Source of the DNA: Octopus bimaculoides
Taxonomy: Eukaryota
DNA: 33,294 nucleotides
Assembly (NCBI RefSeq): GCF_001194135.2
Contig: NC_068985.1
Coordinates: forward strand, 61,522,550-61,555,843
Reading direction: 5' to 3'
In this document: positions 2,829 to 33,294 of the stretch, piece by piece
How the letters are laid out: the number at the start of each line of letters is the position of its first letter
How positions within the stretch are numbered: the first letter of the stretch is position 1
The notes under the pieces: model-generated
The model's input: the letters and a program-made list of their open reading frames with translations, nothing else
Told to the model about the DNA's origin: nothing
Database searches by the model: none
Translations under genes and position numbers: made by a program

Positions 2829-2865
<37 letters not shown>

Positions 2866-3018
2866 ATATGCGTGTACATATGTATATGAGTGTATGCATG
2901 TATATGTATATATTTATACACCCCCATATATATATGTATGTATGTATATATATGTGTGTATTTGTATGCGTCTGTGTGTGTGTGTGCATATGTTTGTGTA
3001 TATGTATATGCATGTTTG

Positions 3019-3062
<44 letters not shown>
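1640..3062. repeat. Compound (TA)n/(CA)n/(TG)n microsatellite field spanning assembly gaps
   Basis: Directly visible; includes N-runs 1705-1714 and 1989-2828. Confidence 0.9.
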
Positions 3063-3063
<1 letters not shown>

Positions 3064-3246
3064 TTAAATAATTTGGGAAAACGAATTTCCAAATCAATCA
3101 GGTAGGACCCTTTATCATTACATGCCTCTGCATATAGTACACTGGGGTCTTGCTTATATATTTATACATTTATCTAGAAATCAAAAATAATTCAGTTTTG
3201 GGGATTAATAGATATGCAGGTATTCTATTTCAAATAATACAAAAAA

Positions 3247-4233: not shown

Positions 4234-4419
4234 NNNNNNNNNNNNNNNNNNNNNNNNNNNNNNNNNNNNNNNNNNNNNNNNNNNNNNNNNNNNNNNNNNN
4301 NNNNNNNNNNNNNATAATAACATTAGGGACAAAATCCAAAATTACAGGTAAAAACTCAATTAAAATCAATTTATAAAAAATTAAAATTAAATTGAGCTTT
4401 ACAGAGTAAAATATATATA

Positions 4420-5725: not shown

Positions 5726-5748
5726 TATATATACACACACACACACAT

Positions 5749-6294
5749 AGTAAAGTCTACGTGCCAACACAAAGTGGCAGTCTTACGCAGGACGATGTTA
5801 TTACTTTTCAACCTCAGGAAAACATCTTTTCCAACTGGCTACCGACACATGGTCTGTGTCCGTATACTGTGAGAAAGGGAATCTATTGGCGATACTTGTA
5901 GACCAATGGTTTCTGGGCTATTTCTCTTCCTCGATACAGGACAATCACCGGGTAGAGATGGTAGCCACTCGACCTTGCTCACAGTATATACTTTTAAAGC
6001 AACACACAGTCGCTGGTCTCGTAAAGAGAACAACTAGTTTTAAATATCTGAGCGAGAAGTATGTAGTAACAGTGTAGGACAGTAAAGTCTATTTACCAAC
6101 ACAATGCAGCAGTCCTACGCAGGAGGATGTTACTACTTTTTAGCCCAAGGAAAACATCTTTTCCAGTTGGCTACCGACACGTGATCTGTATCCGTATACT
6201 GTGAGCACGGGAGTCTTTTGCTCTCTTTCTAGTCTTAGCAATACCTGTAGACTAATGGTTTCTGGGTTATTTCTCCTCCCTGGTACAGGACAAT
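5749..6294 (+). repeat. Diverged tandem duplication, period about 332 bp (copy 1 from 5749, copy 2 from 6081, truncated)
   Basis: AGTAAAGTCTA..CCAACACAA..GCAGTC.TACGCAGGA.GATGTTA..GGAAAACATCTTTTCCA..TGGCTACCGACAC..TCCGTATACTGTGAG..GTAGAC.AATGGTTTCTGGG.TATTTCTC..TACAGGACAAT occurs at 5749-5945 and 6081-6294. Confidence 0.9.
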
Positions 6295-6734
6295 ATATAT
6301 CTATATATATATGCTAGCTTATTGAATATATTAAAAACAGTATTTGTAACTTAAACCAATTAATGTCCACACCAGCAAAAGAAATCATATAATGGCAGCT
6401 TCCCCCAAAATATATAGTATATATATGATATATATAGTATATCTTATGATGTCACCTTAAACCCCGTTTTTCTTTTGTCTTGGTAACATAGGGGATGATA
6501 AATTATTTTGTCAATATTTTTTAGAACATTTCATTGATACTACTGAAATGATGTTATTTATTTTAGCAGCTATTCAACATTGTCATCCTCATTCCGTCAA
6601 AATTATATTGTAATCACACAGAGGTTACTTGTTTCACTTCAATTGGTTTCTTTTTCATCATTCCGTTTGCAAAAATACCTACGGCCTAAGATTCACAAAT
6701 CCTCCAAACGGATTATGGAGTAAATTCCTAAATA

Positions 6735-6840
6735 TGTGACAAAGCACCAACGGTATTTATTACCTTCTGAGTTTAAATCTCACCGAGTTCAACTGCCATC
6801 CCTCCATGGTTAATAAATGTACTGGGGGTCAATTTAATAT
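6735..6840 (+). mobile_element. Decayed tRNA-derived SINE (same family as 19641-19854 and 29186-29390)
   Basis: TTCTGAGTTTAAATCTCACCGAGTTCAACT...GTACTGGGGGTCAAT matches the B-box/central region of the better-preserved copies. Confidence 0.55.
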
Positions 6841-7059
6841 TCTTATAAAGTACATAGATGTGAGTGGAGTGGTAAAAGAAAAGACTAAGACAAAGACTCT
6901 CATGTAGCGGTTTGGCTCTTTATCCTCGCTAAACTTTTTAACTTTATAAATATTTAGTGCAAAGTATGAAAATATTTTCCAGTTACGTCAATCTTTGAGA
7001 GGTATACCATTTAAGCCCGCACCAACTACTGAGTGACCTCTCACTTTAGACATCTCAAT

Positions 7060-7800
7060 CTAATTACTTTCTCCTTAAACGGAATTAAAATCATAATAGA
7101 AATAGGGATCCAAGAGACAGCAACTATCAGGAAAGCATATATCAAGTCCCGTTTATATGAAACCCATATATGAAACCGTCTATCGTAGTTGAAGGAATAA
7201 TACTAAAAGTGGTAAGCAAGTTTGTCTCATTGGACAGCAGACTCAGCCGTTCTTTCTCCTTGGATGATGACATCTGTAAGGCAACTGATTTCTTCAGGGC
7301 TCTTGAGACACGTGTCTGGTCTCAACATAGCATCACAAGCCGAACAAAAGTTGTACTGTGTGCGAGTGCTGACGTTACACCTTTACCCATGTGAGATATG
7401 GAATCATGTAAGGATTCTTGAACTATTCCATTAGAAATGTCTGAGATATATTCTGAATGTTGGCTGGTCCTTGCGGACTCCAGACGATGGTCTTGAGGGT
7501 AACCGATATCCTGAACATTGAGGTGATGATGCACAAGAACCGTTTATGTTGGAGTGAATTCCTTGTTCGGGTGAATGATCAGAAGATTCTTAAGCAGATA
7601 CTATATGGTGAACTTGTTTGGGGATAGTGCCTTCAGCAGAAATCAAGACTATGATTTAAGAATCGTATAAAGTCCTCGTTGAAGGTTTGTGAAATATGGG
7701 ACGTCAGTTGGGAAGGCAATGTTTGTCATTGCCTCATTGGAAGAAACAAGTGAAAGAAGGAGTGAATGTTTTTGAAAAAAGAAAGAAAACAACCCCAAAA
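7060..7800 (+). mobile_element. Decayed RTE (BovB-like) LINE, RT C-terminus and downstream domain
   Basis: LKVVSKFVSLDSRLSRSFSLDDDICKATDFFRALETRVWSQHSITSRTKV, then LRYILNVGW, and VLRVTDILNIEVMMHKNRLCWSEFLVRVNDQKILKQILYGELVWG*...WE...KQVKEGVNVFE; follows the RTE C-terminal pattern (..RIPKQ.LYGEL..G). Multiple stops and frameshifts. Confidence 0.85.
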
Positions 7801-8131
7801 CGTGCAATTTTCATAGAAATTAAGGCGAGCTGCTCAGAAACGCACAGTGTAGTGTAGTGAATAGGAGAAGCTTAGTCCACAATAGGTGAGGACGTTTATG
7901 TTTATCGAAAGCTGGGGTCATTAGTCATCAATGGTGTTACAAGTGTAAGTATAAATTGACTCACAAGTGTGAAGTATAAGTTTGTCTGAGTGCACAATGT
8001 TCCTAATGGTAAATGATGGTCTTCCTCGGTCACTGACAGTCAGCATATACTCGTATATATACATATACATACATACATACATACATACATATGTATAAGT
8101 ATGTATGCATATATACATGTNNNNNNNNNNC

Positions 8132-8174
<43 letters not shown>

Positions 8175-8519
8175 TATACATACATACATACATACATACA
8201 TATGTATAAGTATGTATGCATATATACATGTGTGCATATATACATATATGCATATATATATTTATATATGTAAGTAACAAAGAAGTACGGGTTTCAATTC
8301 ATTACGCCCGTTTCCAACGACTCCTTTAATTGATTAATGAGAACCATTGCATCATTGTAAAGAAACCGTTTTCGTCAGATGAATTCTTGTCCTTCAAACG
8401 TAAAGGACAGTTTAACTTATTCAACATAGTTAACAAATGCACGGAGTAAAAATATTTACATTGATCCTGGCAGAATGAACTTACGAGAATAGTGTGCATA
8501 TATGTGTATGTATGTATGT

Positions 8520-8558
<39 letters not shown>

Positions 8559-8623
8559 TGTATTTCGTTTTTGTATTTGGTTTGCAAGATTCTTTATGTG
8601 AATTCGTGTGTTGAAGCATATTT

Positions 8624-8828
8624 TATTGTGTCTGGGGAGATTCATTCTGTTTTAATGCCTTATTAATTAATACACTCACTGGTTCGATTTCCACTCATTT
8701 ACTTATTTATTTTTTCTAAAAATTTCGCTGCTTCTTGCAACCTATTGAAGAGGTTGCAAAAAGCAAGGAAAAGTGAATCGAACCGGTTTTAAGGCATTAA
8801 AACAGAATGACTCTCTCCAGTCACAATA
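8624..8828. repeat. About 205-bp palindrome (inverted junction), possibly two Penelope-like terminal repeats or a MITE; right arm runs into a gap
   Basis: TATTGTGTCTGGGGAGATTCATTCTGTTTTAATGCCTTA (8624) vs TAAGGCATTAAAACAGAATGACTCTCTCCAGTCACAATA (to 8828); central perfect stem TTGCAACCT-attgaag-AGGTTGCAA. The palindrome is certain; the Penelope assignment is inference. Confidence 0.8.
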
Positions 8829-10351
8829 NNNNNNNNNNNNNNNNNNNNNNNNNNNNNNNNNNNNNNNNNNNNNNNNNNNNNNNNNNNNNNNNNNNNNNNN
8901 NNNNNNNNNNNNNNNNNNNNNNNNNNNNNNNNNNNNNNNNNNNNNNNNNNNNNNNNNNNNNNNNNNNNNNNNNNNNNNNNNNNNNNNNNNNNNNNNNNNN
9001 NNNNNNNNNNNNNNNNNNNNNNNNNNNNNNNNNNNNNNNNNNNNNNNNNNNNNNNNNNNNNNNNNNNNNNNNNNNNNNNNNNNNNNNNNNNNNNNNNNNN
9101 NNNNNNNNNNNNNNNNNNNNNNNNNNNNNNNNNNNNNNNNNNNNNNNNNNNNNNNNNNNNNNNNNNNNNNNNNNNNNNNNNNNNNNNNNNNNNNNNNNNN
9201 NNNNNNNNNNNNNNNNNNNNNNNNNNNNNNNNNNNNNNNNNNNNNNNNNNNNNNNNNNNNNNNNNNNNNNNNNNNNNNNNNNNNNNNNNNNNNNNNNNNN
9301 NNNNNNNNNNNNNNNNNNNNNNNNNNNNNNNNNNNNNNNNNNNNNNNNNNNNNNNNNNNNNNNNNNNNNNNNNNNNNNNNNNNNNNNNNNNNNNNNNNNN
9401 NNNNNNNNNNNNNNNNNNNNNNNNNNNNNNNNNNNNNNNNNNNNNNNNNNNNNNNNNNNNNNNNNNNNNNNNNNNNNNNNNNNNNNNNNNNNNNNNNNNN
9501 NNNNNNNNNNNNNNNNNNNNNNNNNNNNNNNNNNNNNNNNNNNNNNNNNNNNNNNNNNNNNNNNNNNNNNNNNNNNNNNNNNNNNNNNNNNNNNNNNNNN
9601 NNNNNNNNNNNNNNNNNNNNNNNCGTCGCCACATCAGCAACATGAGTCTACGACTACTAACCAGCATCATCGTCATGACCAACACGATTCTACGATTACT
9701 ACTAACCAGCATCAATCTCCACCAGCGTCAACACGACTTACTATGTACACCAAACTAAACCACCGCGGCACATCTCTCTCTTCGATTCTGTTAGGTGACT
9801 CAGCTTCACCACGATAATAAACAGACAAGAGATTTCAGCCAGCGACGAACGACGAACATCTGTATAACAAGAATCACGGCCCGGCATGGAAGCCACCACA
9901 TCACAACTAGTGATCAGCGCTGCCACACACAGCCTCACTCCCTTCACATACAGACTCATACTAATGTGTACTGAAGAACTGGTATAAATGCTCACGTGTT
10001 ATTGACTCTCTTTCTATCTGCTGTAATATCTCACATACACATACATGTATCACTCACATACACACTTTTCTTTGTATGACGGCCTGTCTTTTATTATGTT
10101 CTTATATGTCGCATTCACACTCTCACACAGACATACACTTTAACGCCATAATAAATATCTGTTATTCATCTCATACGGTTGTCTTTTCTATCGTCTCATT
10201 ACTGGCTATTTGTGTTATCGTAGTATAAAATATCTTATGTATATCATCTTTGATATATTATTTTGTGTTCGACCGTGTGACGCGTTTAAATAAAAGGAGT
10301 CCTCTGTTTTTCCATCCGTCACCATTTCTCCTTTTTGAGTTCGCACGGTCG

Positions 10352-10535
10352 TTTTTTTCTTTTACTTATTTCAGTCATTTGACTGCGGCGATGCTGGAGC
10401 ACCGCCTTTAGTCAAATCAAATCGACCCCAGGATTTATTCTTTGTAAGCCTAGTACTTATTCCATCGGTTCTTTTGCCGAGCCGCTAAGTTACGGGGACC
10501 TAAACACACCAGCATCGGTTGTCAAGCGATGTTGG
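10352..10535 (-). mobile_element. 3' part of a SINE with A-rich tail; 5' end lost in a gap
   Basis: Reverse complement reads ...GGCAAAAGAACCGATGGAATAAGTACTAGG...CCTGGGGTCGATTTG...AAAGGCGGTGCTCCAGCATCGCCGCAGTCAAATGACTGAAATAAGTAAAAGAAAAAAA; shares the GAT..AATAAGTAC and CTGGGGTCGAT motifs with other SINE copies here. Confidence 0.75.
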
Positions 10536-12419
10536 NNNNNNNNNNNNNNNNNNNNNNNNNNNNNNNNNNNNNNNNNNNNNNNNNNNNNNNNNNNNNNNNN
10601 NNNNNNNNNNNNNNNNNNNNNNNNNNNNNNNNNNNNNNNNNNNNNNNNNNNNNNNNNNNNNNNNNNNNNNNNNNNNNNNNNNNNNNNNNNNNNNNNNNNN
10701 NNNNNNNNNNNNNNNNNNNNNNNNNNNNNNNNNNNNNNNNNNNNNNNNNNNNNNNNNNNNNNNNNNNNNNNNNNNNNNNNNNNNNNNNNNNNNNNNNNNN
10801 NNNNNNNNNNNNNNNNNNNNNNNNNNNNNNNNNNNNNNNNNNNNNNNNNNNNNNNNNNNNNNNNNNNNNNNNNNNNNNNNNNNNNNNNNNNNNNNNNNNN
10901 NNNNNNNNNNNNNNNNNNNNNNNNNNNNNNNNNNNNNNNNNNNNNNNNNNNNNNNNNNNNNNNNNNNNNNNNNNNNNNNNNNNNNNNNNNNNNNNNNNNN
11001 NNNNNNNNNNNNNNNNNNNNNNNNNNNNNNNNNNNNNNNNNNNNNNNNNNNNNNNNNNNNNNNNNNNNNNNNNNNNNNNNNNNNNNNNNNNNNNNNNNNN
11101 NNNNNNNNNNNNNNNNNNNNNNNNNNNNNNNNNNNNNNNNNNNNNNNNNNNNNNNNNNNNNNNNNNNNNNNNNNNNNNNNNNNNNNNNNNNNNNNNNNNN
11201 NNNNNNNNNNNNNNNNNNNNNNNNNNNNNNNNNNNNNNNNNNNNNNNNNNNNNNNNNNNNNNNNNNNNNNNNNNNNNNNNNNNNNNNNNNNNNNNNNNNN
11301 NNNNNNNNNNNNNNNNNNNNNNNNNNNNNNNNNNNNNNNNNNNNNTTTAGCTGATCTTGCTGAGTAAATTTGACTTTTATGGGCAGGTAAATTTAATTGA
11401 CAAGTGTAAAAGCAATAACATTATGGATAAACACTAAAATTGAAATTCTTTATGTATCTTACCTGTTTGATATGTTACTAAAATTATCCCAGAGGGCAAC
11501 CGACAAAAATTTTGCCACTTTTCAAGATGAGGTACATTAGTTTGAATTAATTAAAATACAGGTAAATCGCTACAAGATTTTATTCTTTCGGTAAATATTT
11601 CGTACTTCGGTATGGAATAATTTTTTTCGGGTGCATTCAACGTATCTGACCTCCAAACCCACTGCAAGCCACTTTTTTTTTTCAGAAAAGAAAGGTGGGA
11701 GGAGTGGTGGGGACCTCGACGTTTCCCATCCAGAGAGTTTTGTTTCGCGGGTAATTTTCTTTTCCAGATTATTTTGCATGTTTTCAACAAATGTTACATC
11801 GAAATCACGGATAAACGGCTCCTTTTTCTAGAAAAGGAAAGATTTGGCTGCTGTTTCTAGCATGCCCTGCTACCACATAACAACTATTTGCGTTCACACC
11901 GAAATATTTACAAACTTTTTTCCTTCCATTTATTTTTTCCACTTTAAGGAAGTCAATATTTTCTCTGTTGACATCCATCTCAGTTAATTTTGCTTTTCTC
12001 CCAGTTCTGTGTTTTCTGGAAGAAAAGCCCCCACCTTATCTGAAAGCTATGAGAATGCACAAACGTGATTTGTTTATTTTTAAAAAAGATTTCGTAGAGC
12101 AATGGATTTTGGCCGGTTTAAACATTAAAGGGTTAAAAAGTGCCAAAACTACAAAATCGGCTTTTTTGGTCTTTTTGAGGGCTTTAGAACCCCAAAATGC
12201 TGATTTTATAATTTTAAATTTCAAAGGGCCTAAAAAAGGCTGATTTCATAGTTTTGGCCTTTTTAAAAATGTTTTTAAGGGCTTTTAGAGTCAGAAAGGG
12301 TAAAAAAAAAAACTCAAACGAAACACAATATGAGTATTTAACTAAAGTTTATTGATAAAGTGGCCGTAAAAAAATAAGAATTTAAAAAAAAAATGAGTAA
12401 TACGATATATACAAAATTT

Positions 12420-13138
12420 TATTTTTCCTGTTCTTCTCCACTTTGTTGATGAGATTCATGTTGCTCTTCATGAAAATTAACATACTAAAATTTTCATCAG
12501 ACAAGGACGATCTCTTGGCACTCAAAGATGTCTTTGCCCATGGAAGATAAACGCTTATTTGCAGCACTGGGAAGGATGGCTGTGTTGAATTTGATGAAGG
12601 CAGCATCTGTCAGTAGATTTTTGGAGTTGGTCTCCAGCCTTTACTAAATTCTGGGCCTTGTCCTTCAGTGGCCTGTGGCTTCTGCTCTCTTTTTGTTGGG
12701 TGACACCACTGAAGAAGTCATGCCCCACCTCTTCGTTGTTGCTGTCTCCACTGCTGCTGCTCACTTCCTCAGACTACTGCCTCATGGTCACTTCGACCTT
12801 ATCCTCTATGCTTCTCTTCACCTTGGTGAACTTGGTGCTATCGTACCTATCCAACCAGATGAGGCGAAACCTAGGGCGGAAGGCAGCAGTCAGTTGGCAT
12901 TCTTCATCGTCCAGGAGGTTCACAAATCTTTTGTCGATGTCTGCCAAAACTGCATCGACCAAGGGGCTGCAGTAGGCAAGTTTTGGGTTAACGGATTTAA
13001 GTTAATGGAAGCTAAATGTAACGGAAGTTAATTAGTCCGATAATGATTTTCAAAGTTTACTTAAAAGTTAAATCGTTAACGAAAATGTTAACATCGTTAA
13101 TTAACGATTAACGAATTAACGGGCTTACGCCCAGCTCA
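12420..13138 (-). mobile_element. Internally deleted hAT-superfamily DNA transposon (terminal region fused to transposase C-terminal half)
   Basis: Minus-strand peptides CQLTAAFRPRFRLIWL, FIKFNTAILPSAANKRLSSMGKD and LSAKRSSLSDENFSMLIFMKSN match the hAT C-terminal dimerisation region (..PSSA..ERLFS..KR..LSD.NF..L.F.K.N). Terminus GAGCTGGGC at 13137-13129 with clustered TTAACG/CGTTAA subterminal repeats at 12980-13122. The other terminus was not found. Confidence 0.85.
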
Positions 13139-14239: not shown

Positions 14240-14635
14240 CTCACTATTCTCTGAAATAAAGACTTTTCTGTCCCAAATGACTAAGTCAGGTCTTTTATGT
14301 GTCTACTTGGTAGAAATTATTCCTTGCGATGATATGTAAATGTATATTCAATAACAGAAGTGTTGTCTATACTTATCCTAGTGTAGTCTTCCGCATGGAT
14401 GGCATTGTATATCGTTTTAGTAATGAAATTATGACTCAGTGGGAAGTAGTACTTTGATGACATTTTTGGACAGCTGTTGACTACATGATTTATGTCCTCC
14501 ACAGAAGAGTGACATAAGCGACATTTGCGGTTGCATCTTGGGATTTTAAGGGCTTCGCTAACTCCTTTTGTTCATTTGATATTTCGTAGCTATCACCCGC
14601 TCTTGGATTGCAAAAGCATAGCCTTCAGAAATGAC
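14240..14635 (-). mobile_element. R4/Dong-like non-LTR retrotransposon 3' fragment (CCHC zinc knuckle plus RLE endonuclease)
   Basis: SEGYAFAIQERVIATKY...RKCRLCHSSVEDINHVVNSCPKMSSKYY...KRPDLVIWDRK; homologous to 17190-17580 on the plus strand. Confidence 0.85.
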
Positions 14636-15100: not shown

Positions 15101-17935
15101 TATTACTCTAAAAGAACACCTAGGAGAAATCTACAGTAAACAAAGTAACGAAATTACTAAACAGAAACAACCTAAATGGAAAACAAAACTTGAAGGAATC
15201 AACAACGTGCGCCACCACATCGGATGGTTAACTACAGCAATAAGGAGAAAGGAGAAAAACGGGTTTACACCTCACCAACTCTACCTTAGACAAAAATGAA
15301 CGAGACTTTATGGCAACTCTTCTCACCAAGCTCTTGAGGAAAGGCTAATCATTTTAAAACATGAACTTAGGACGATAAGCGAGAAACTCCACTATCGCAT
15401 GCGAATTTTTGAATGAGTCAGTATCAATCGCAAATTTGCTTCTAATCCATAAGCATTATACAGAGAGACGAGGAAGGAAAATATTCCAAAAATTTGGAAC
15501 GAAAAGAGGGATTTCAACTTGAATGCAACATGGTTAAATACAATTGAGAGAATACTGTACCAACACTAACAGTAAAACACACAAAATCGATGCAGAGATC
15601 TCCGCTTAGGCAAACTGCAGAACAGGAAGGCACCTGGAAAGGACCTAATAGTTGGATATTGGTACAAGAAGCTGACACTTTATAGAAACCAGTTGATATG
15701 TATGTTCAAAAATGACTATGGAAGGTTAGGCTGATATACCAAATTAGCTTGCTACAGCAAGTACAAATCTTGTTCCCAAAAATCAAATCACGGAGATGGC
15801 AGGAAACTACAGGCCCATTGCCTGTCTAAACACTGTACAAACGGTACACAAGTTGCCTCAACCAGTTCTTCCAGGACCATTGTGAGTCGAACAACATTGT
15901 AACTGATGAAGTCTGATGGAAAGAAGGGACAGTGGGGATGTGCCGAACAACTTTTAATAAACAAAGTTGTACTGTCTGAAGTAAGAAAACAGCGTAGAAA
16001 CCTTGTGTCAGTATGGCTCGACTATAGGAAGGCATTCAACTCTATCTCTCATTCATGACTGTTGAAGTGCCTACACCTGGCAAAAGTACCCACCACCCTA
16101 ATTGCTGAAATAGAGAGACTCACAAAGATGTGGACAACAGTTCTCACCCTTCCAACTGAGAATAGAATAATTGTTTCAGATAGTATAGGCATCTCAAAGG
16201 GAATAATCCAGGGAGATAGACTATCTGTACTTCTTTTCATTTCGGCACTGAATCCATTATCGTTCCTACTGCAGAAAACAAATGGTTACATGCTAAGATC
16301 TTCAACTACTAGCAATATCCATGTAACTCATAATTTCTTTGTAGACGATCTGAAGATTTATGCTAAAAGTGTTAAAAATACCAAAAAACAACTGGAATTA
16401 ATAATAACATTTTCAGCTGATGTCGGCATGGAATTTGGCCAAAAGAAATGTTCATATTTGGTTATAGAACGAGAAAAGTCAGTCCCCAAAACCCAAAACC
16501 TGTGCATGAACGGTATCTATCTCTCCCATTCCACACAAATAATGTTACAAGTACCTAGGCATAGACGAAAATGTATCATATGAAGGCACAGAGAATAAAG
16601 ATAGAGTGACCCGAGAATATTACATCAGACTTAGGAAAATATGACAATCGGGACTCTCCTCTTACAGAAAAAACAATATCCCACAATGAATTTGCAGTGC
16701 CAGTGCTGATCCCAACATTTGGGATACTTGATTGGTCTGCAGAGGAAATCTACTTCATAGATATCAAAACCCGCAAAATCTTGAAAGCAACTGGAAACGT
16801 CCACAGAAACAGTGATGTTGACAGGCTCTACCTAAGAAGAAATGAAGGTGGTAGAGGCCTGAGATCAGTGCAGGCGGCCTTCGAATGCCGTATGGTATCA
16901 CTCAGGCAGCATATGCTGAACAACAGCAGCAAAAATAATATATAAATGCAGTACTGAAAAGTGAAGTGAGCAACATTGTGCGAGTTGGCAGCGTTCTCCT
17001 CAAGAAGCACCCTCACCCTGATGATCGCCTACTTAGCCCCAAAACAGCTGGGCTCTCTTATTTCAGAGAAGGCCTGGATGGAAAGCACTCAGCATACAAA
17101 AAAAAAAAGTATATGCATGGGTATGTTGCCCGGAAGCTTGAAGAAGACAGTAGAATTGACACGAAGCGCAACCTCTCTTGGACACAAGACCACTACATCA
17201 CGTCACACTTTGAAGGCGTAGGAGATTGCCACAAAGTACTTGGTGAACATGAGAGACAGTGATGCTCTTGTAATACCAAAGTGCAACTGCATGTGAAGGC
17301 TATGTCATGTTTCTGTGGAAGACATCACGCATGTGATTAGCAGCTGTCCTAAAATGTCGTCACGGTACTACCTCCCTATGCGGCACGATGTTGTTGCTAA
17401 AACAATTTACAACGCCATCCGCAAAAAATGTCCTGAAATAAACTTAGAAAAAATCCTTCTGTTATGGAATACCTTCATAAACACCAACTCAAGGAATACT
17501 GGTGGAATATCCTCATCAGAACTTCTGTCAAATTTAAACACAACTGGCCGGATATTGTCGTTTGGGACAATAGAGGTCAATTGCCCTGCAGATATAAATA
17601 TCTCTGTGAAAATCAAAGAAAAAGAGGATATTTATGGACAACTGCATCCATCTTCTATAATCAGACTGAATTCATATACATACCAATAATAATTGGAGCA
17701 CTAGGTTTTGTTAGTAAATGCTTAAAGAAGAATCTGGATAAACTGGAATTTTCAGGAAGAGAAATCGACCAGCTAATTCGTACATTACAAATGCAATCTT
17801 TGAGTGGAGAAGTAAAAATATGCAAGGCTCTTCTCAAGTTCCAAATGTGAATTTGTCTATGTTAACTACATCCTAAAGATGGAGTCTTGTCTCTGTTGGA
17901 AACCGGCCCCCTCCTCAGTGGAAGATTTATAATAA
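15100..17935 (+). mobile_element. 5'-truncated, decayed R4/Dong-clade non-LTR retrotransposon (RT + CCHC + RLE endonuclease, single ORF)
   Basis: KAPGKDLIVGYWYKKL; NYRPIACLNT; WLDYRKAFNSISHS; GIIQGDRLSVLLFISALNPLS; HNFFVDDLKIY; DVGMEFGQKKC; LYLRRNEGGRGLRSV; ITSHFEG; RLCHVSVEDITHVISSC..RHD; HNWPDIVVWD; IIIGALG; ORF end at 17850, then a 3' UTR ending TTTATAATAATTAAA. Many stops and frameshifts. Confidence 0.92.
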
Positions 17936-21500: not shown

Positions 21501-22487
21501 TTTTCTTGAAAACACAACACCAGCACCAGCAGCAGCAACAACAACAATAATAATAATAGTAATAGTCATATTCAAACCCCACAAAGTAAATGGTTTTTTT
21601 TTTAATGATGACAGTTATTGGCATTTGGTAAAAGTAACAAATAGCGGTTCGAGACTCAGTTTTTATTATTTTAAGAAACAGTCACTAAAATTGGCCCATA
21701 ACAGTTTATATAGTTTCTAATACTGGACATTAAGATAAAAGAATTATATTCAGTTGGAAATATATGCCTATAGAGATCGAAGCACTGGATTTCGTCAAAT
21801 TTGTTTATTTTTTGTTTCATCTTTCCCATACGAGAAATTTCTCATTATTTGGTGAAAGTTGGATTCTAAAAAGGAACCGTAGTCAGGTTTTGGCCAGATT
21901 TGAACCACCTCGTTCAAGATTCCTGTTTAGAACCACAGCCTAATTATATCGCCATAAAAAGCATGACCGGCTCCTTGAAAGAACAGAATGCCTACATAAA
22001 TGTTTACCAGCCAATCAGCGACGGCTAACATGTATCAGCCAACGGCGGTAAATATTAAAGAAAAGTTATGAAAGCTTCCCGCTAAATTATATTTCGAAAG
22101 TTTTCAGAAGACTTGTCCAGGTTTATAGAATGTTGGCACCGTGAAACCCACACTAGAACCAACTCAAGTTTCATACAGACCCTTGTCTCTTTGTTCCTCG
22201 AGACGTGCTTTCATTTCCTATTTGTCCTGATATGACATACACTGAAAATGCATGTTTGACAAAGGTAAATTATCCTTGTGTTTTCATGTCGTCATACATA
22301 CATCCGTTATTTTCTTTATCTCCTACATTGTAAATCTTTAAGCATTACAGCTTTACAGAAATGTTCATCAATGTAATATATTTGAACAAATATAAACTGT
22401 TTAATATAATAAATGTATGGAAAAATTATTTTGAGTGGTCATTCTTGTCTACGGACACAGCTTCTTACCTCATTATTCACCACAATA

Positions 22488-23631
22488 GGATCTTTTCCTT
22501 TTGGCCGGCACATAGAAAAAATAATTTTTGTAACTAAACACTTTCAAATTTCGTATACTGGTAGAATGTGTCATTTAAAACATCATTTACTCTTGGCATT
22601 TTAAAGAAAATTCTTTATTTTCGAAGTTATATTTCGTGTTAAAGTTGTCGTATTTCGGTAATTTCAACCAATCAATGACGTCTATTGAGGTGAAAACAAT
22701 TACTGCTGTTGTTTGTCAACAACAACTTCCGGCGGTATATATTTCATTTGTCACTGTTATTTCTGATATATTTACATTTGAGATACACGTGTGTATAGTT
22801 TAATCAATTCAGTTATTAGCTATTCTTAAAATTTTTTCAGTTTATTTTGTTTGTGAAAGTATTTTCGCTTTGTGTTAGCTTTTTCGAAATTGCCTATTTT
22901 GGGATCTTTTCCCTTGAATAAAATTACTGCCGTTGTTTGTCAACAACAACTATCGGCAGTGTATATTTCGTTTGTCACTGTTATTTATGACATCGTTCGT
23001 GCGTTTGTACTGGTTTTAGCTTTTGACTTTTAGGGTTAGNNNNNNNNNNNNNNNNNNNNNNNNNNNNNNNNNNNNNNNNNNNNNNNNNNNNNNNNNNNNN
23101 NNNNNNNNNNNNNNNNNNNNNNNNNNNNNNNNNNNNNNNNNNNNNNNNNNNNNNNNNNNNNNNNNNNNNNNNNNNNNNNNNNNNNNNNNNNNNNNNNNNN
23201 NNNNNNNNNNNNNNNNNNNNNNNNNNTAACCTAACCTTAAAACTCTAACCCTATCCCTAACCCTAACCCTCACCCTAAAACCCCAACCCTAACTCTAAAA
23301 CACGAACCCTAAACCTGAAACCCTAAAGCTAAAACCAGTACAAACGCACGAACGATGTCATAAATAACAATGACAAACGAAATATATACCACCGGAAGTT
23401 GTTGTTGACAAACAATAGCAGTAATTCTTTTCACCTCAATAGACGTCATTGGTTGAAATTACCGAAATACGATAACTTTAACACGAAATAACTTCGAAAA
23501 TACGCAATTTTCTCAAAAACGCCAAGAGTAAATGATATTTTATGTGACACATTCTACCAGTATACGAATTTTGAAAGTGTTTAGTTACAAAAAAATATTT
23601 TTTCTATGTGCTAGCCAAAGGAAAAAGATCG
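22488..23631. mobile_element. Non-autonomous foldback DNA element, copy 1 (Merlin-like MITE) with telomeric-repeat core
   Basis: Termini GGATCTTTTCCTTTTGGCCGGCACATAGAAAAAATA / TATTTTTTCTATGTGCTAGCCAAAGGAAAAAGATCG; 8-bp TSD CCACAATA at 22480-22487 and 23632-23639; arms palindromic inward to TTTTAGGGTTAG|gap|TAACCTAACC..CCCTAACCCTAACCC. Confidence 0.92.
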
Positions 23632-23661
23632 CCACAATATAATGACCACTATACAGAATGA

Positions 23662-24531
23662 GGATCTTTGTGGTTTGACGGGCAACATTTTTTTATGTAG
23701 TGTTTTTGGTACCGAAGCACTTTCAAACTTCGTATACTTGTATATTTTGTGGTATAGAACAGATAAAAAAATTTTGTATTCGAAGTTATTTCACGTTAAA
23801 AATTGTCTTATTTCGATAATTTCAACTAATCACTGACGTCTATTCAGTTGAAAACAGTTAGCGCTGTAACGGTGTATATGGTATTAATCCCCGTTAGTTC
23901 TGACATTTCCGATTAACTAGACTGTTCGTAAACAAAGGGGAAAAAGCCATCAAAATACTTGAATATTGCCTGCACTTGTTATTGGAGCTCGCAGAATTAT
24001 TAATGCACCTCCACCAAGTGCTTCATTTCCTAGANNNNNNNNNNNNNNNNNNNNNNNNNNNNNNNNNNNNNNNNNNNNNNNNNNNNNNNNNNNNNNNNNN
24101 NNNNNNNNNNNNNNNNNNNNNNNNNNNNNNNNNNNNNNNNNNNNNNNNNNNNNNNNNNNNNNNNNNNNNNNNNNNNACTAACCCTAACTCTAGAATCCGA
24201 ACTCTAAAATTGTTACACACACAGATACGCACAGCGTAATTTATTATATAAACAATATATGCGTATAAATTACGATTAAACCGGATGAAATATGTCACAG
24301 GGAATAACATTTTTATGACCGGCCAGCAGTGACTGTATTCAGCTGAATAGACGTCAGTGATTGGTTGAAATTACAGAAATACAACTTTAACATGAAATAA
24401 CTTGCGATGTACAATTTTTGTTAAGAAGGCTAAGAGAAAAAGTTGTTTTGTATGACACATTCTACCAGTGTCCCAAGTTTGAAAGTGTTTCGTTAAGAAA
24501 ACAAGTGTTGCCCGTCAAATCACAAAGATCC
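23662..24531. mobile_element. Non-autonomous foldback DNA element, copy 2 (Merlin-like MITE)
   Basis: TIR GGATCTTTGTGGTTTGACGGGCAACA / TGTTGCCCGTCAAATCACAAAGATCC (25 of 26 match); 8-bp TSD CAGAATGA at 23654-23661 and 24532-24539; CTAACCCTAACTCTA immediately right of the central gap. Confidence 0.93.
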
Positions 24532-25099
24532 CAGAATGATACACAACGAACCATGCTGATGACTCATTCCCCTATTTGAAAACGATTTTGTTTGCTTAAC
24601 CTTACGTTGATAATGCGAAATTATCTCTCTGTGTTTTAAAAATTGAGTTATTATATGTAAGGATCCAATGTACCTTATCTATTGAACTCGCTTCTGTACC
24701 GGCAATAAGTCCTGAATTTTTAGAGTCAAACATTAACTCGAAAACTAACAGCTATGGAAAATTTAGTAGAAACACAAAGTAGAATTACATGCTGATTTAA
24801 CCTCTCCTCACAACGACAATCATCACGTTAGCTTTAGCTTTTGAACCGTGACGAAATAGTTTAACCTATTCTGTGAGGCGCTATAGAGAGTACATTGAGT
24901 ATAGCGCTACACAAAAGGATCTCAGTTCGAATCTTTATGGGTGTGATAAAATGAGTACCATGTTTCATTTTATTTATTATACTTTCTCTCTCTAAATGTA
25001 TAGCTTTCTCAATACTTTTCCCGTCGGAAATGTGAGCGGCTTACAAGAGGGTAGATAATCTAGATAGTCATCTTTATATTTCGGAAATCGGTGATGTAA

Positions 25100-25310
25100 T
25101 AACAATTTCTAATTTAGCAACAAAACCCATAATTTTGTAGAGAAGGGGTTAATCGGTTAAATTAATCCCAGCATTAGACTGGTACTTTATTTTATCGACT
25201 CCGGAAAGATGTAAGGTAAAGTTGTCCTGTGTGGGATTTGAAGTAAGAATGTAAAAAGCCATAAATAGATGCTTCAAGGTATTTTGTCGACACTTCAGCA
25301 ATTGATGGAG
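25100..25310 (-). mobile_element. Decayed tRNA-derived SINE
   Basis: Reverse complement contains GTCGACAAAATACC..TTCAAATCCCAC..CATCTTTCCGGAGTCGATAAAATAAAGTACCAGTCTAATGCTGGGATTAAT. Confidence 0.7.
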
Positions 25311-25829
25311 ATATGACAAGAATTTGTTGGTTTTATTGTTGAAGAAACTGTCATGTTTATTCCTTTTTATAGTATAAGCCGCCCGATCGTTTCACGATGG
25401 CGTATGATGACGGGAAAGGAGGGTTGATATTCTCAATCGACTCAGTTTTCTCACTTCCACTTTCTTCTACATTAATGACTTACATCCACCCGCACCCATT
25501 TCAAAATGATATTATTTCCTGTTCTTTAACGTTCAACACACAAATATCCACACATAACCTAGACATTTCTCACCACACTTGTCCCATTTCCTAAAAACAT
25601 TATCGCCGACATAATTTCTTTCAACACCAACCAACAAACATTACTACGTATCAAGGAAACACTGTCGCAACAATACATTCTCTTTACTCCTGATTATAAC
25701 ATATAAATTAAACATTACTATTAAACATTATAATTAAGCTCCCCTCATAATTTCAAATGCTAAAATCTCTGATTACCTTCCATGATTATTCATCTTAAAC
25801 AAAACTGCGCCCCCAAAACAAGATGATGC

Positions 25830-26410
25830 TTTCAGAGCCAAAAAGGTCTTCAGTTCTGTTCAGTTGCTGATCTTCTACAAAGCACAAGTACAATACATAT
25901 TAAAGTACAGATCAAATATTGGGATCAGTGCTCTCACTTATACGAGTGCACACACGCACACATACAAACAGGCATGCACACACACACACACACACACTCG
26001 CGCACATACTCGTACATACACACACTCACTCTCTCTCTCTGACACACATACACTCACGCATACTCACAATTACGCACATTGTAAGTTGTATTAAAATAAA
26101 CTGATCTTGCTGAAAATCGAAGAACTGCTGATTCACACACACTATAGTCACAACCCCAAACACCATCTTTGTTTCTTTCACTGCTACTATAATGGCTTCT
26201 ATTCCTCTGAATTAGACTGAATGTATCATCACCATTTGCTCATCCAATATACCCGTCTCCTTCCTATTCGTTATGCTGCTGCTTCTCACTCAACAAATCC
26301 TGCACAAACCCTACTTCCTTATCAAGAACCGCGTTAACTGGAACTCTACGTCAGCTTCACCATCCTGGGAAGGTCTTATTCTTTGGAAATATGCAAAGTG
26401 ATCTAGGAAT
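25830..26410 (+). mobile_element. Decayed CR1-clade LINE 3' end interrupted by a (CA)n tract (about 25945-26070)
   Basis: FRAKKVFSSVQLLIFYKAQVQYILKYRSNIG (cf. LL.LYKAQ.RP.LEYCS.IW), LCFFHCYYNGFYSSEL (cf. L.LFYRYY.G.CS.EL) and FLIKNRVNWNS (cf. F..RT...WNSLP). Confidence 0.65.
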
Positions 26411-26655
26411 GAGATAACCAGACCAAATTCACTCAAATATACGCTAACGTTACAAAAAAAGAAAAAGAAAAAAAAAAGAAAACGTTAGTCACTGTAGTTC
26501 TTGATGAACAAACTGACGGATAGTCATAGATGGAACAACTTTGATCAAAGGCTGACTCAATCAGGACAGGACAAAGGTTAAAACCAACAGTAATTCCTTT
26601 CAGACAACCCATCTTCTTTTACAAATACTGCGTTGTTATTACCAGTAGAAAAGAC

Positions 26656-27232
26656 GGATCTTTTTTAAAACGGGGGCCACATTTTTCATTAACGAAACAC
26701 TTTGAAACTTGGAACACTGGTAGAATGTGTCATATAAAACATCTTTTTCTCTTAGTCTTCTTAAAAAAAAAAGAAATCCATAAGTTATTCCATGTTAAAG
26801 TTGTCGTATTTCTGTAATTTCAACCAATCACTGACGCCCATTCAGCCGATATACATTAAGTGCCGACTACATAAACAAACGATTCTGAAACAATTAACCC
26901 TAACCCTAACCCTAGGGTTAGGGTTAGGGTTAGGGTTAGGGTTAGGGTTAAAGCAAATTTAAAATGAAAAAAGCAAATAAAACGAAGGTATGGAGATTAA
27001 ATACGCTTAATCAGCCAAAGGAGTAAATATAAACAACTGAATACTTGTCAGTGATTGGTTGAAATTATCGAAATAAGACAATTTTTTTACATGAAATAAA
27101 TTCGAATACAAAAATATTTTTCTGTTCTATAACACAAAATAGATAAGTATACGAAGTTTGAAAGTCTTTCCGTACCAAAAACACTACGTAAAACATTAAT
27201 GAAAAATGTGGCCCCCGTTTTAAAATAGATCC
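26656..27232. mobile_element. Non-autonomous foldback DNA element, copy 3 (Merlin-like MITE, 577 bp, gap-free) with an inverted telomeric core
   Basis: TIR GGATCTTTTTTAAAACGGGGGCCACATTTTTCATTAA / TTAATGAAAAATGTGGCCCCCGTTTTAAAATAGATCC (36 of 37 match); 8-bp TSD GAAAAGAC at 26648-26655 and 27233-27240. Confidence 0.95.
26895..26950. repeat. Interstitial telomeric sequence (TAACCC)3-TA-(GGGTTA)6
   Basis: Directly visible; perfect 38-bp palindrome at 26895-26932 centred on CCTAGG. Confidence 0.98.
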
Positions 27233-28293
27233 GAAAAGACACTTTATAGAAAAGCTGTCTACTTGAAAAATACCTTTGAAATATTGTGTACCTCATCAGA
27301 GACGATCTCTGTGTTTGTAAGAGTATAATTTATGTTTTATCAGAGGGTACTGTTATCATGTTGCTTTTGTTTTATTGTACAGAAACAATCCGATTCCTAT
27401 CCGAATGCTCTTCACATTGAGCCACTCTTCAGATTTTGTATCTCCTACGCCACAAATACATGCAAGCATATTTAGACACCCTCTCTCTCTTCCGCTTTCA
27501 GACAAATATTTATGTATCTATATATCTAACCTAATATTTAATAGTTGTGTGAGCCTAAGTGTAAGTGAGAATGAAAGATTTTTTGGCGATAGAGAAATAT
27601 ATTCCATCTGGAAGCAATTATAAATTATATCTTTGTAGTGTAAAAATAAATACCCACACTAATGATAAATATAGAATCCAGCAATTAACAACGGAATGGG
27701 TTGCATTTTTACTACAATTTTATCAGATCGTCGTCTGTATGACCTACTTTGACTTTTGTCCTCCCAACGGTAAAAAATATGCCTTATTCCCATATGTGAT
27801 TTTAAGAAATCATACACACACACACATACATAAACACATGTCTGCTAACAAATATAGTCTTCCATTTAAAAGCGCGCGTGTACACATACACCTCTCACAC
27901 AACACGGGAGATAAAGTTCATTAGTGTTTATTTAAATTTTTTGTTTTATAATTGTTTAAAAATATCAAAATGAAGAAATTCAAAGAAGCTTTTGGTTAGA
28001 TGAAAATATTTCTGCTGAACTGTTTGGTAGTAGCGTTGTTTAATATAGTTGAATTGTGAGATAAGGAAAAGAGCCTTGCTGACCGATATGTTTCCCTTAC
28101 AACATACCTAGAAATGATGCGAACAAATAAACGGACTGTTATATTAATATAAAATAGCTGGCTTTATAAAGTTGTGTGCAATAAACAACACTGGAGTTAT
28201 ATGTATTAAACATCATTGTTGTACGTCATCACTACAGTCAGCCACTTGCCAAGATATCAGAGAATATCTGAAAATAAAACTACTGTAAAACAT

Positions 28294-28484
28294 CATGTAT
28301 ATAATACATGGTATTAGGTGTGTATATAATATATGGTATTAAAGGTGTGTAAAATATATAGTATAGGGTATGTGTCTAATATACGGTATTGGTGATGTGT
28401 ATAATACATGGAATTAGGTGTGTGCACAATACATGGTATTAGAAGTGTGTATAATACATGGTATAAAGGATGTTTACAATACAT
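28294..28484 (+). repeat. Degenerate minisatellite, unit about 23-25 bp (approximately GTGTATAATACATGGTATTAGGT), about 8 copies
   Basis: ATAATACATGGTATTAGGTGTG variants recur throughout the interval. Confidence 0.8.
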
Positions 28485-31129: not shown

Positions 31130-31300
31130 CTTAAAGAGAGTCAGCAACTATGTGTCATTATTGAAGAGTCATCGTACGTGTCATTAAAGAAGCGTCATCA
31201 TATATTTGTCACTAAAGGAGAGTTATTACATACGTATTATCAAAGGAAAATCACCATGTGTCATTATAGGAGAGTCATCATATATGCGTCATTAAATGAG
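31130..31300 (+). repeat. Degenerate minisatellite, unit about 30 bp (approximately GAGTCATCATATGTGTCATTAAAG), about 5-6 copies
   Basis: GAGTCA..TGTGTCATTA variants recur at roughly 30-bp spacing. Confidence 0.7.
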
Positions 31301-32529: not shown

Positions 32530-33294
32530 CAGGGGTTGGACAAAATAATGGAAGCACCTAGCATTATAGCATCATAATTTTGAAATATCTATAAAACCGT
32601 CAAAAGCTTGTTTATTTTTATGTGTTTTGGTTTGTTGCTTAATATGTTTTGCTAAAATTGCTGTTTCTTTTCAGATATCATCAGAAAAAGGTAATTAAAA
32701 TTCATTAAAATAACAGATCTATCGGACTATCAAAGAGGTCAAATTGTTGGTGCTTGAATGGCAGGCGCTAGCGTAACGAAAGCAGTCGAAATGTTTGGTG
32801 TACCAAGAAGTAATGTCTCGAAAATAATGACAGCCTTTGAGAAAGAGGGAAAAACCTCCTCGTCGAAACAAAACTCCGGAAGAGAACCAAAACTTTCAGA
32901 TAGGGACCGTCGGACACTTATGCGAATTGTTTGAAAGGATCACAAAAGTACAGCTCCCCAAATTATTGCAGAGCTTAATGACCATCTCGAGAACTCAGTT
33001 TCCACAAAAATTGTTCGACGGGAGCTGCACAAAGCCGTATTTCACGGGAGGACTGTAATCAGAAAACCAAGACCACTACTTTCAAAAACAAACGTTGCAA
33101 AGCATTTAGAGTTGGTCCCATACAGAATTGTCCCTAGAGCAGTGGAAGAATGTTATTTTCTCGGACGAGTCATCCTTTACCTTATTTCCGACTACCGGCC
33201 GAGTATACCTGTCGAGACAGCCAAGAGAAGCATTTGACCCAGGCTGCCTTCTTCCAACTGTTAAAGATGGAAGAGAATCCGTGATGATCTGGGG
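32530..33294 (+). mobile_element. Tc1/mariner transposon, left end and disrupted transposase (continues beyond the window)
   Basis: TA|CAGGGGTTGGACAAAATAATGGAAGCACC left TIR. From 32710 (ATG mutated to ATA): TDLSDYQRGQIVGA*MAGASVTKAVEMFGV..SGREPKLSDRDRRTL (HTH and GRPR-like motif), and KNVIFSDESSF..VMIWG (first D of the DDE triad). In-frame TGA at 32755 plus frameshifts. Confidence 0.95.

What the first reader, a model, noticed from the sequence alone, without database searches (positions are those of the whole stretch)
22480..27240. Family of TSD-bounded foldback MITEs that carry telomeric repeats at their centre (best candidate system)
Seen: three related elements in 4.8 kb (22488-23631, 23662-24531, 26656-27232). 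Each starts GGATCT, ends in its inverse, and has its own perfect 8-bp TSD (CCACAATA, CAGAATGA, GAAAAGAC), so these are three independent transposition events. All three have TTAGGG/CCCTAA repeats at the axis, and in copies 1 and 2 the assembly gap falls exactly there. Established: GG-termini with 8-bp TSDs typify the Merlin/IS1016 superfamily (hAT and P also make 8-bp TSDs but usually begin CA/TA); TTAGGG is the molluscan/vertebrate telomere repeat. Inference: a non-autonomous family is spreading interstitial telomeric sequence, with potential G-quadruplex, cruciform and telomere-protein binding sites. The repeats may be an inherited part of the element, or added by telomerase-type healing of breaks at the hairpin tip. 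I cannot confirm novelty; Merlin-type elements with telomere-like interiors may already be catalogued in other animals.
Basis: partly seen in the sequence, partly recalled or inferred. Interest (0 to 1): 0.8.

Follow-up and report, generated by a model that had tools for sequence, protein, structure and literature searches.

The report
Mobile DNA elements carrying telomere-like repeats
Three small, non-coding cut-and-paste transposons of one family lie within 4.8 kb of an unidentified animal genome, and each carries a stretch of TTAGGG-type (telomere-like) repeats that appears to be inherited with the element; this is an unusual cargo for an otherwise ordinary kind of mobile DNA.

Summary
There are three related elements: e1 22488-23631, e2 23662-24531 and e3 26656-27232. 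Each is flanked by a perfect direct repeat of exactly 8 bp. Five of the six ends read GGATC; the right end of e1 reads CGATC.

All six arms align over about 215 bp, and no other copy is in the window. The elements are non-coding long-inverted-repeat transposons. 5'-GG termini, long inverted repeats and 8-bp duplications fit the published Merlin/IS1016 definition, but no transposase could be found, so membership is untested.

- Only e1 is a true foldback (arms 91% identical). e2 and e3 have two diverged arm types, A and B (69-78% identical), and lie in opposite orientations.
- The ground plan is armA-spacer-(TTAGGG-like)n-spacer-armB, with the G strand running from A to B.
- e1 and e2 share the arm/array junction and the same variant repeats, so the array is inherited and not added by telomerase in each copy. 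e3 adds a perfect 38-bp palindrome whose polarity telomerase cannot produce.

Both assembly gaps fall in or next to the arrays. I could not make a genome-wide census, find an autonomous partner, identify the host or check the repeat libraries. This is a moderately interesting new variant of a known kind.

The parts
22480..22487 (.). e1 left target-site duplication CCACAATA
   Evidence: Identical to 23632-23639. It is exactly 8 bp; 7 and 9 fail.
22488..23631 (+). Element e1: A/A-type foldback, rearranged, with an assembly gap at 23040-23226 at its centre
   Evidence: Termini are GGATCT...AGATCG. The arms are 89-91% identical.
22488..22769 (+). e1 outer left arm (type A)
   Evidence: Pairs with 23355-23630 at 89%. 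nhmmer E = 3.5e-74.
22770..22914 (+). e1 extra segment, ending in a second copy of the terminal motif GGATCTTTTCCC (22902-22914). It separates two copies of an arm segment (22691-22769 and 22915-22993, 87% identical).
   Evidence: Repeat D10; GGATCT at 22902; nhmmer partial hit at 22914-22983. There is no TSD at this inner terminus.
22915..23039 (+). e1 inner left arm, running into TTAGGGTTAG at the edge of the gap
   Evidence: Reverse complement of 23309-23433, 125 nt at 88% (I3).
23227..23330 (-). e1 degenerate telomere-like array. The G-rich strand is on the minus strand, so it reads inward from the right arm. It has 9 GGG runs.
   Evidence: TRF period 6 at 23241-23298; unit breakdown.
23331..23631 (-). 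e1 right arm (type A)
23632..23639 (.). e1 right TSD CCACAATA
23654..23661 (.). e2 left TSD CAGAATGA. Only 14 bp of host DNA separate it from the e1 TSD.
23662..24531 (-). Element e2: A/B type, in the opposite orientation to e3, with an assembly gap at 24035-24176
   Evidence: The reverse complement of e2 is colinear with e3. Termini are GGATCT...AGATCC.
23662..23866 (+). e2 arm B
   Evidence: 83-89% identical to e3 arm B at 27034-27193.
24177..24208 (-). e2 degenerate telomere-like array on the arm-A side of the gap
   Evidence: 86% identical to the e1 array at 23285-23313, sharing the same variant units (D5).
24324..24531 (-). e2 arm A
   Evidence: 85-86% identical to e3 arm A.
24532..24539 (.). 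e2 right TSD CAGAATGA
26648..26655 (.). e3 left TSD GAAAAGAC
26656..27232 (+). Element e3: A/B type, 577 bp, ungapped, with no coding capacity
   Evidence: The terminal 37-38 nt are 97% complementary (I20). Folded as single-stranded DNA, z = -14.
26656..26863 (+). e3 arm A
26895..26932 (.). Perfect 38-bp spacerless palindrome TAACCCTAACCCTAACCC|TAGGGTTAGGGTTAGGGTTA
   Evidence: Equal to its own reverse complement.
26913..26951 (+). e3 perfect (TTAGGG)6.3 array with 6 GGG runs; it matches a G-quadruplex pattern
   Evidence: TRF reports 100% matches.
27034..27232 (-). e3 arm B
27233..27240 (.). e3 right TSD GAAAAGAC
22659..22680 (+). Most conserved subterminal block, TAATTTCAACCAATCA(C/A)TGACG (CCAAT-like plus TGACGTC-like). 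It is preceded by three direct (T)ATTTC repeats and occurs once per arm; the other copies are at 23444-23461(-), 23817-23838(+), 24352-24373(-), 26815-26836(+) and 27046-27067(-).
   Evidence: A role as a transposase-binding or promoter-like site is inference only.

Best explanation
These are three independent insertions of one family of non-autonomous cut-and-paste DNA transposons with long, partly diverged terminal inverted repeats (TIRs; MITE-like or foldback-like). A transposase encoded elsewhere recognises the GGATCTTT termini, and probably the conserved subterminal blocks, and makes staggered cuts 8 bp apart at the target. The best candidate is a Merlin/IS1016-type DDE enzyme, at roughly even odds.

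The family ground plan is armA - spacer - (TTAGGG-like)n - spacer - armB, with the G-rich strand running from A to B. The telomere-like array is an inherited internal microsatellite that is carried along passively and expands, contracts and decays like any short tandem repeat.

Inferred steps:
- e1 is a secondary A/A palindrome. It could have arisen by inverted duplication of an A half about a break in the array, and it was later rearranged or mobilised as a composite.
- The 38-bp perfect palindrome in e3 is a small hairpin-type or template-switch inverted duplication at the arm-A edge of its array.
- Each transposition deposits a short interstitial telomere-like tract with G-quadruplex and hairpin potential. 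The same tracts are what break short-read assembly at 23040-23226 and 24035-24176.
For: Shown:
- Exactly 8-bp perfect TSDs in 3 of 3 copies, p about 3e-5 each.
- GGATC termini in 5 of 6 ends.
- Six homologous arms of about 215 bp, found nowhere else in the window.
- Two arm types with cross-copy pairing: e2R/e3L 85% and e2L/e3R 83%, against 66-78% between A and B.
- e2 in reverse complement is colinear with e3, including the position and polarity of the array.
- e1 and e2 share the junction ...GTGCGT.TGT...TTTTAG and the variant block GTTCGnnTTyTAGAGTTAGGGTT (D5). e2 and e3 share AACAATT immediately before the array.
- e3 is 577 bp with no coding capacity and folds as one hairpin, z = -14.
- The Merlin definition (5'-GG termini, TIRs of 24-462 bp, 8- or 9-bp TSDs) comes from PMC8101967.
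- Mobile elements carrying central tandem repeats are an established kind in molluscs (PMC3879986; PMC7492417).
Against: - There are only three copies, all from one 4.8-kb stretch.
- No autonomous partner or DDE_Tnp_IS1595 reading frame is in the window.
- No relatives were retrievable from any collection.
- The host is unidentified, so it is not shown that TTAGGG is its telomere motif.
- The e3 array is perfect while the e1 and e2 arrays are degenerate. That needs recent slippage or homogenisation in the e3 lineage, or some renewed addition.
- The two gaps hide the centres of e1 and e2.
- Superfamilies other than Merlin also make 8-bp TSDs.
Confidence: 0.7

Rival explanations
1. Telomerase added the repeats independently in each copy, by healing a break at the hairpin tip or during abortive gap repair after excision. 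On this view the repeats are a recurrent scar and not an inherited part of the element.
For: In e1 the G-rich strand reads inward from both arms. That is the polarity expected if two facing 3' ends were extended by telomerase and then joined. The e3 array is perfect, as a recent addition would be.
Against: e1 and e2 have arms only about 78% identical, yet they share the arm/array junction and specific non-canonical units (D5). e2 and e3 share the junction AACAATT. In e3 the C-rich strand reads inward from both arms, which 3'-end extension cannot give. The polarity in e1 also follows automatically from mirroring an A half that already carried the array.
Confidence: 0.1
2. The elements are the same kind of non-autonomous transposon, but they are mobilised by a superfamily other than Merlin that also makes 8-bp TSDs (hAT, P, some MULEs, Zisupton, Novosib).
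For: An 8-bp TSD is not unique to Merlin (my own knowledge of the superfamilies). No Merlin transposase was seen. A weak hAT-like C-terminal reading frame lies 10 kb away at 12385-13001(-), read by eye.
Against: The termini are 5'-GG, not the CA/TA-type ends of hAT and P elements. None of the three TSDs fits nTnnnnAn (that consensus is from memory). Pfam did not confirm the hAT-like frame. The arms have no similarity to sequence near it.
Confidence: 0.3
3. The internal array is simply a T/G-rich microsatellite that happens to match TTAGGG. It has no historical or functional link to telomeres, and the host telomere motif might even be different.
For: The e1 and e2 arrays are mixtures of TTTTAGAG, TTTAGGG, TTCGTG, TGAGGG and similar units, not clean telomere repeats. 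The host was not identified. No chromosome end is in the window.
Against: e3 has six to seven perfect TTAGGG units plus three perfect CCCTAA units. TTAGGG is the commonest unit in e1 as well. TTAGGG is the ancestral metazoan telomere motif (established knowledge).
Confidence: 0.2
4. These are not transposons but local inverted duplications or scaffolding artefacts around telomere-like repeats.
For: Two of the three copies contain assembly gaps at the centre. Palindromes are prone to misassembly.
Against: There are three different perfect 8-bp TSDs at precisely the GGATC boundaries. e3 is ungapped and has the same architecture. The copies are 66-91% diverged and so are not assembly duplicates.
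Confidence: 0.02

Closest known systems
Merlin/IS1016 superfamily, non-autonomous (MITE) derivatives
   Same: Terminal 5'-GG, 8-bp TSDs, and inverted repeats within the published 24-462 bp range (PMC8101967).
   Different: No DDE_Tnp_IS1595 transposase has been linked to these termini. I found no description of a Merlin element with an internal telomere-type array in the searchable literature. Repbase and Dfam could not be consulted.
Tandem-repeat-containing mobile elements of molluscs (DTC84 and pearl-related elements; Helentron non-autonomous elements of Crassostrea gigas)
   Same: Short non-coding mobile elements whose centre is a short tandem array, which spreads tandem repeats through the genome (PMC3879986; PMC7492417).
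   Different: Those carry satellite-like core repeats of roughly 100-bp scale plus a microsatellite. They have an 'AA' putative target site and Helentron (rolling-circle) affinities. They do not have 8-bp TSDs, GGATC inverted termini or telomere-type hexamers.
Foldback-type DNA transposons of Drosophila (FB, Galileo, Tetris)
   Same: Long inverted arms that make the element a hairpin, a variable centre, and a tendency to rearrange. Tetris is listed as a foldback element in PMC9659126; the rest is from my own knowledge.
   Different: From memory, FB makes 9-bp and Galileo 7-bp TSDs, against exactly 8 here. Their arms are built of tandem sub-repeats; here the arms are unique sequence, and only e1 is a true foldback.
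Short interstitial telomeric sequences inserted by telomerase at double-strand breaks; head-to-head telomere fusion sites
   Same: Interstitial (TTAGGG)n tracts. e1 has the head-to-head (TTAGGG)n...(CCCTAA)n polarity of a fusion site. This comparison rests on my own knowledge.
   Different: Here the tracts lie inside TSD-bounded mobile units and share junctions and variants between copies. They therefore move by transposition and not by repair at each site.

Membership tests
Merlin/IS1016 superfamily (as a non-autonomous member) | 8- or 9-bp target-site duplication | tested here: met
   Exactly 8 bp and perfect in 3 of 3 copies. Definition from PMC8101967.
Merlin/IS1016 superfamily (as a non-autonomous member) | Terminal inverted repeats of 24-462 bp that begin with 5'-GG | tested here: met
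   GGATC at 5 of 6 termini; the e1 right end is CGATC. The e3 termini are 37-38 nt at 97%, and arm homology extends to about 215 bp.
Merlin/IS1016 superfamily (as a non-autonomous member) | An autonomous partner with the same termini that encodes a DDE_Tnp_IS1595 transposase | not testable with these tools
   There is no such reading frame in the window. The host genome is not in any searchable collection.
hAT superfamily MITE | 8-bp TSD | tested here: met
hAT superfamily MITE | Short TIRs beginning with (C/T)A(G/A)NG, and a TSD consensus of nTnnnnAn (both recalled from memory) | tested here: not met
   The termini are GGATCT. The TSDs CCACAATA, CAGAATGA and GAAAAGAC do not fit in any of the three copies.
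Foldback (FB/MULE-related) and Galileo (P-related) foldback elements | TSD of 9 bp (FB) or 7 bp (Galileo) (recalled from memory) | tested here: not met
   Lengths of 7 and 9 bp fail in all three copies.
Foldback (FB/MULE-related) and Galileo (P-related) foldback elements | Very long, near-identical inverted arms that make up most of the element | tested here: inconclusive
   Met for e1 (arms 91%). e2 and e3 arms are only 69-78% identical over about 200 bp.
Tandem-repeat-containing MITEs / Helentron non-autonomous elements (DTC84, pearl, Cg_HINE) | Central short tandem array flanked by conserved non-coding arms | tested here: met
Tandem-repeat-containing MITEs / Helentron non-autonomous elements (DTC84, pearl, Cg_HINE) | 'AA' putative target site and Helentron-type ends, with no long TSD (PMC3879986) | tested here: not met
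   8-bp TSDs of unrelated sequence, and GGATC...GATCC ends.
Telomerase-inserted short interstitial telomeric sequence | Repeats added de novo at each site, so junctions and variants are independent between loci | tested here: not met
   Shared junctions and shared variant units between copies (D5).

The most novel reading that the evidence does not exclude
The telomere-like array is not passive cargo but the engine of the family's evolution and a genome-wide source of functional telomere seeds. On this reading, breaks at the G-rich array repeatedly convert A/B elements into perfect A/A or B/B palindromes; a single transposon end plus the array is enough to regenerate a mobilisable two-ended element. 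The array may be refreshed by telomerase. Copies scattered by transposition would then provide interstitial sites that bind telomere proteins and can heal into new chromosome ends.
Probability: 0.1. Interest if true: 0.75.

Novelty: new variant of a known kind. Interest (0 to 1): 0.42.

Why it matters
If the architecture holds genome-wide, this family would be a transposition-based route for scattering telomere-type repeats through a genome. The usually cited sources of interstitial telomeric sequence are chromosome fusions and telomerase-mediated repair. It would also explain a class of assembly gaps, namely a palindrome plus a G-rich repeat. It would give testable sites for fragility, G-quadruplex or hairpin formation and telomere-protein binding. 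Lastly, e1 may show how one transposon end plus a break-prone repeat can be turned into a new two-ended foldback element. None of this is shown beyond three copies.

Tried and rejected
1. Looking for more copies.
- Exact-pattern scans for the most conserved arm block (TAATTTCAACYAATCAMTGAC) in metagenome, prokaryotic-genome and viral collections gave no hits.
- A second block (ACTTTCAAAYTTCGTATAC) gave 7 metagenome hits, all limited to the seed and therefore chance matches.

2. Pseudo-peptide search. I translated the stop-free frame through the arms, aligned the six peptides (A3) and searched 5.8 billion predicted proteins for spurious ORFs from other copies. Nothing scored.

3. Identifying the host.
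- The reverse-transcriptase fragment at 16062-16583 has best hits of only 54-55% identity, in an unnamed ENA assembly.
- The Tc1-like fragment has a best hit of 74% and a best named hit of 53% (an amphipod).
- Rfam and tRNA scans found nothing.
- The host therefore remains unknown. My impression of a cephalopod or other mollusc (36% GC, dense TATA/CACA microsatellites) is untested.

4. A hAT-like reading frame at 12385-13001(-), noticed by eye, was not confirmed by Pfam. It shows no link to the elements.

5. Ten literature searches found no description of a MITE or foldback element with internal telomeric repeats. Candidate papers on amphioxus, Linum, mudminnow and Darwinula turned out to be irrelevant. 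Absence from this library does not prove novelty.

6. I looked for a gradient of degenerate-to-canonical repeats toward the centre of e1, as at real chromosome ends. There is none.

7. The sigma-70 promoter/terminator scan and the structure-prediction tools were not used, because they do not apply to a eukaryotic non-coding element.

Full report
**What is in the sequence**

Reading 22300-27400 and checking by script confirms three bounded units.
- e1, 22488-23631: CCACAATA|GGATCT...AGATCG|CCACAATA.
- e2, 23662-24531: CAGAATGA|GGATCT...AGATCC|CAGAATGA.
- e3, 26656-27232: GAAAAGAC|GGATCT...AGATCC|GAAAAGAC.

The flanking direct repeat is exactly 8 bp in each; lengths of 6, 7, 9, 10 and 11 fail. 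At this base composition an 8/8 match at a fixed boundary has a probability of about 2.9e-5. Three out of three is therefore not chance, and the three different repeats mean three separate insertions. One small correction applies: the right terminus of e1 is CGATC, not GGATC.

**Family relationship**

The six arms, oriented from terminus inward, align over about 215 bp (A1). BLASTN and an nhmmer profile of the arms find only these six arms plus one internal duplicate in the 33-kb window.

The identity matrix shows two arm types. Type A comprises both e1 arms, the right arm of e2 and the left arm of e3. Type B comprises the left arm of e2 and the right arm of e3.
- Same type across copies: e2R/e3L 85%, e2L/e3R 83%.
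- A against B: only 66-78%.
- The two e1 arms: 91%.

So e2 and e3 are A/B elements lying in opposite orientations, and only e1 is a true A/A foldback. A global alignment of reverse-complemented e2 with e3 is colinear throughout: armA - spacer - G-strand array - (gap in e2) - spacer - armB.

e3 is 577 bp, ungapped and has no coding capacity. As a single strand it folds into one long hairpin (-110.7 kcal/mol, z = -14).

The best-conserved block in every arm is TAATTTCAACCAATCA(C/A)TGACG, preceded by three direct (T)ATTTC repeats. It could be a subterminal transposase-binding region or a CCAAT/CRE-like promoter remnant. That is inference only.

**The assembly gaps**

Each gap lies between two arms that are tied together by a matching TIR and TSD pair.
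- In e1 the sequence on either side is mutually reverse-complementary (22915-23039 against 23309-23433, 125 nt, 88%; I3). The right side carries about 104 bp of array and the left side only about 20 bp. At least about 85 bp of array plus the true centre must therefore be hidden.
- In e2 the order across the gap matches the ungapped e3.

The joins are thus consistent, but the gap lengths and contents are not known. The '153-nt, 99%' inverted repeat I1 is N matched against N.

**The telomere-type repeats**

Arrays of TTAGGG/CCCTAA occur only inside the three elements. Elsewhere the window holds four isolated hexamers.
- e1: the G-rich strand reads inward from both arms. The array is a mixture of units (TTTAGGG, TTCGTG, TTTTAGAG, TTAGGG, TTGGGG, TGAGGG and others).
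- e2: only a short degenerate array is visible on the arm-A side, with the G strand reading inward. Nothing is visible on the arm-B side before the gap.
- e3: (CCCTAA)3(TTAGGG)6-7, all perfect. This includes a perfect spacerless 38-bp palindrome at 26895-26932.

Two observations decide between 'inherited' and 'added anew'.
1. e1 and e2 have arms only about 78% identical, yet they share the arm/array junction and the same non-canonical block GTTCGnnTTyTAGAGTTAGGGTT (D5; alignment A2). e2 and e3 share AACAATT immediately before the array.
2. In e3 the C-rich strand reads inward from both arms, which telomerase extension of a 3' end cannot generate.

The simplest account is an ancestral A-(TTAGGG)n-B element whose array has since slipped, decayed and been locally rearranged.

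**How it most likely works**

Shown: these are TSD-bounded, non-coding, inverted-repeat elements that inserted three times.

From established knowledge: such elements are moved in trans by a DDE transposase that binds the termini and subtermini and makes staggered target cuts, here 8 bp apart.

Which transposase is not shown. The published Merlin definition is 5'-GG termini, TIRs of 24-462 bp and 8- or 9-bp TSDs (PMC8101967). All three features are met, whereas other superfamilies fit less well:
- hAT-type termini and target consensus are not met.
- The 7-bp TSD of Galileo and the 9-bp TSD of FB are not met (both from memory).

No DDE_Tnp_IS1595 reading frame is in the window. I rate Merlin at roughly even odds.

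Inferred:
- e1 looks like an A half mirrored about the array. This would follow if a break in the G-rich repeat was capped or fused and then replicated into an inverted duplication.
- The left arm of e1 also carries an extra 145 bp that ends in a second copy of the terminal motif (GGATCTTTTCCC at 22902) without its own TSD, followed by a duplicated arm segment (D10). e1 may therefore be a composite that was mobilised by its outermost ends.
- The e3 palindrome is the kind of product left by hairpin opening or template switching.
- e1 and e2 inserted 14 bp apart although they are only about 78% identical. This suggests a local target preference and not mother-daughter hopping.

**Comparison with what is known**

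Non-coding mobile elements with a central tandem array are well described in molluscs, for example DTC84 and pearl-related elements (PMC3879986) and Helentron non-autonomous elements (PMC7492417). Those have different ends, different target sites and satellite-like cores. Foldback transposons such as FB, Galileo and Tetris share the hairpin architecture but not the TSD length. Interstitial telomeric tracts are usually attributed to chromosome fusions or telomerase-mediated repair. Here they ride inside a transposon.

Ten full-text searches found no description of this combination. Repbase and Dfam could not be consulted, and the host is unidentified, so the element may already be catalogued there.

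**Limits**

- There are only three copies, all from one locus.
- No census was possible. Pattern scans of three collections found nothing beyond chance seeds, and a pseudo-peptide search found nothing.
- The host telomere motif is not verified.
- The centres of e1 and e2 are unread.

**Verdict**

The transposon family, the 8-bp TSDs, Merlin-like termini and a telomere-type array as a family feature all hold. Telomerase healing is disfavoured, the 'axis' picture holds only for e1, and genome-wide spread and any function are untested. I classify it as a new variant of a known kind, of moderate interest.

Noticed in passing
window 23632-23661: e1 and e2 are separated by only 14 bp of host DNA between their TSDs, although their arms are only about 72-79% identical. 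With e3 about 2.1 kb away, that makes three insertions in 4.8 kb and none in the other 28 kb. This suggests a local insertion hotspot or a preference for sites next to existing hairpin-forming copies.
   Followed up: partly
window 22770-22914: The left arm of e1 holds an extra 145 bp ending in a second copy of the terminal motif (GGATCTTTTCCC at 22902) with no TSD of its own, followed by a duplicate of arm segment 22691-22769. It may be a composite ('macrotransposon'-like) element or a product of aberrant repair.
   Followed up: partly
window 16062-17850 (+) and 14320-14571 (-): A degenerate non-LTR or other reverse-transcriptase element (Pfam RVT_1, E = 1.4e-9) is broken into several frames. 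A second, inverted copy of its C-terminal cysteine-rich part lies about 2 kb upstream. The best database relatives are only about 55% identical.
   Followed up: partly
window 32758-33294 (+): Frame-shifted fragments of a Tc1/mariner-type transposase run off the end of the window. Homologues carry PF01498 and PF13358; the best hit is 74% identical.
   Followed up: partly
window 12385-13001 (-): Reading frames here resemble, by eye, the C-terminal part of a hAT-type transposase (…TAAFRPRFRLIWL… and …RSSLSDENFSMLIFMKSN…). Pfam gave no supporting hit, so this is unconfirmed.
   Followed up: partly
window 28296-28484 and 31137-31294: Two minisatellites: a 25-bp unit in about 7 copies (TGTGTATAATACATGGTATTAGGTG) and a 28-bp unit in about 6 copies. 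Neither is related to the elements.
   Followed up: no
window 1705-11345: Seven further assembly gaps of 10-840 N lie here, several of them beside TA/CA-type microsatellites. This suggests a short-read scaffold in which simple repeats and palindromes are systematically unresolved.
   Followed up: no
window 24860-24935: A short stretch has a tRNA-like look (…CAGTTCGAATCT…), which could be a SINE fragment. ARAGORN and Rfam report nothing here.
   Followed up: partly
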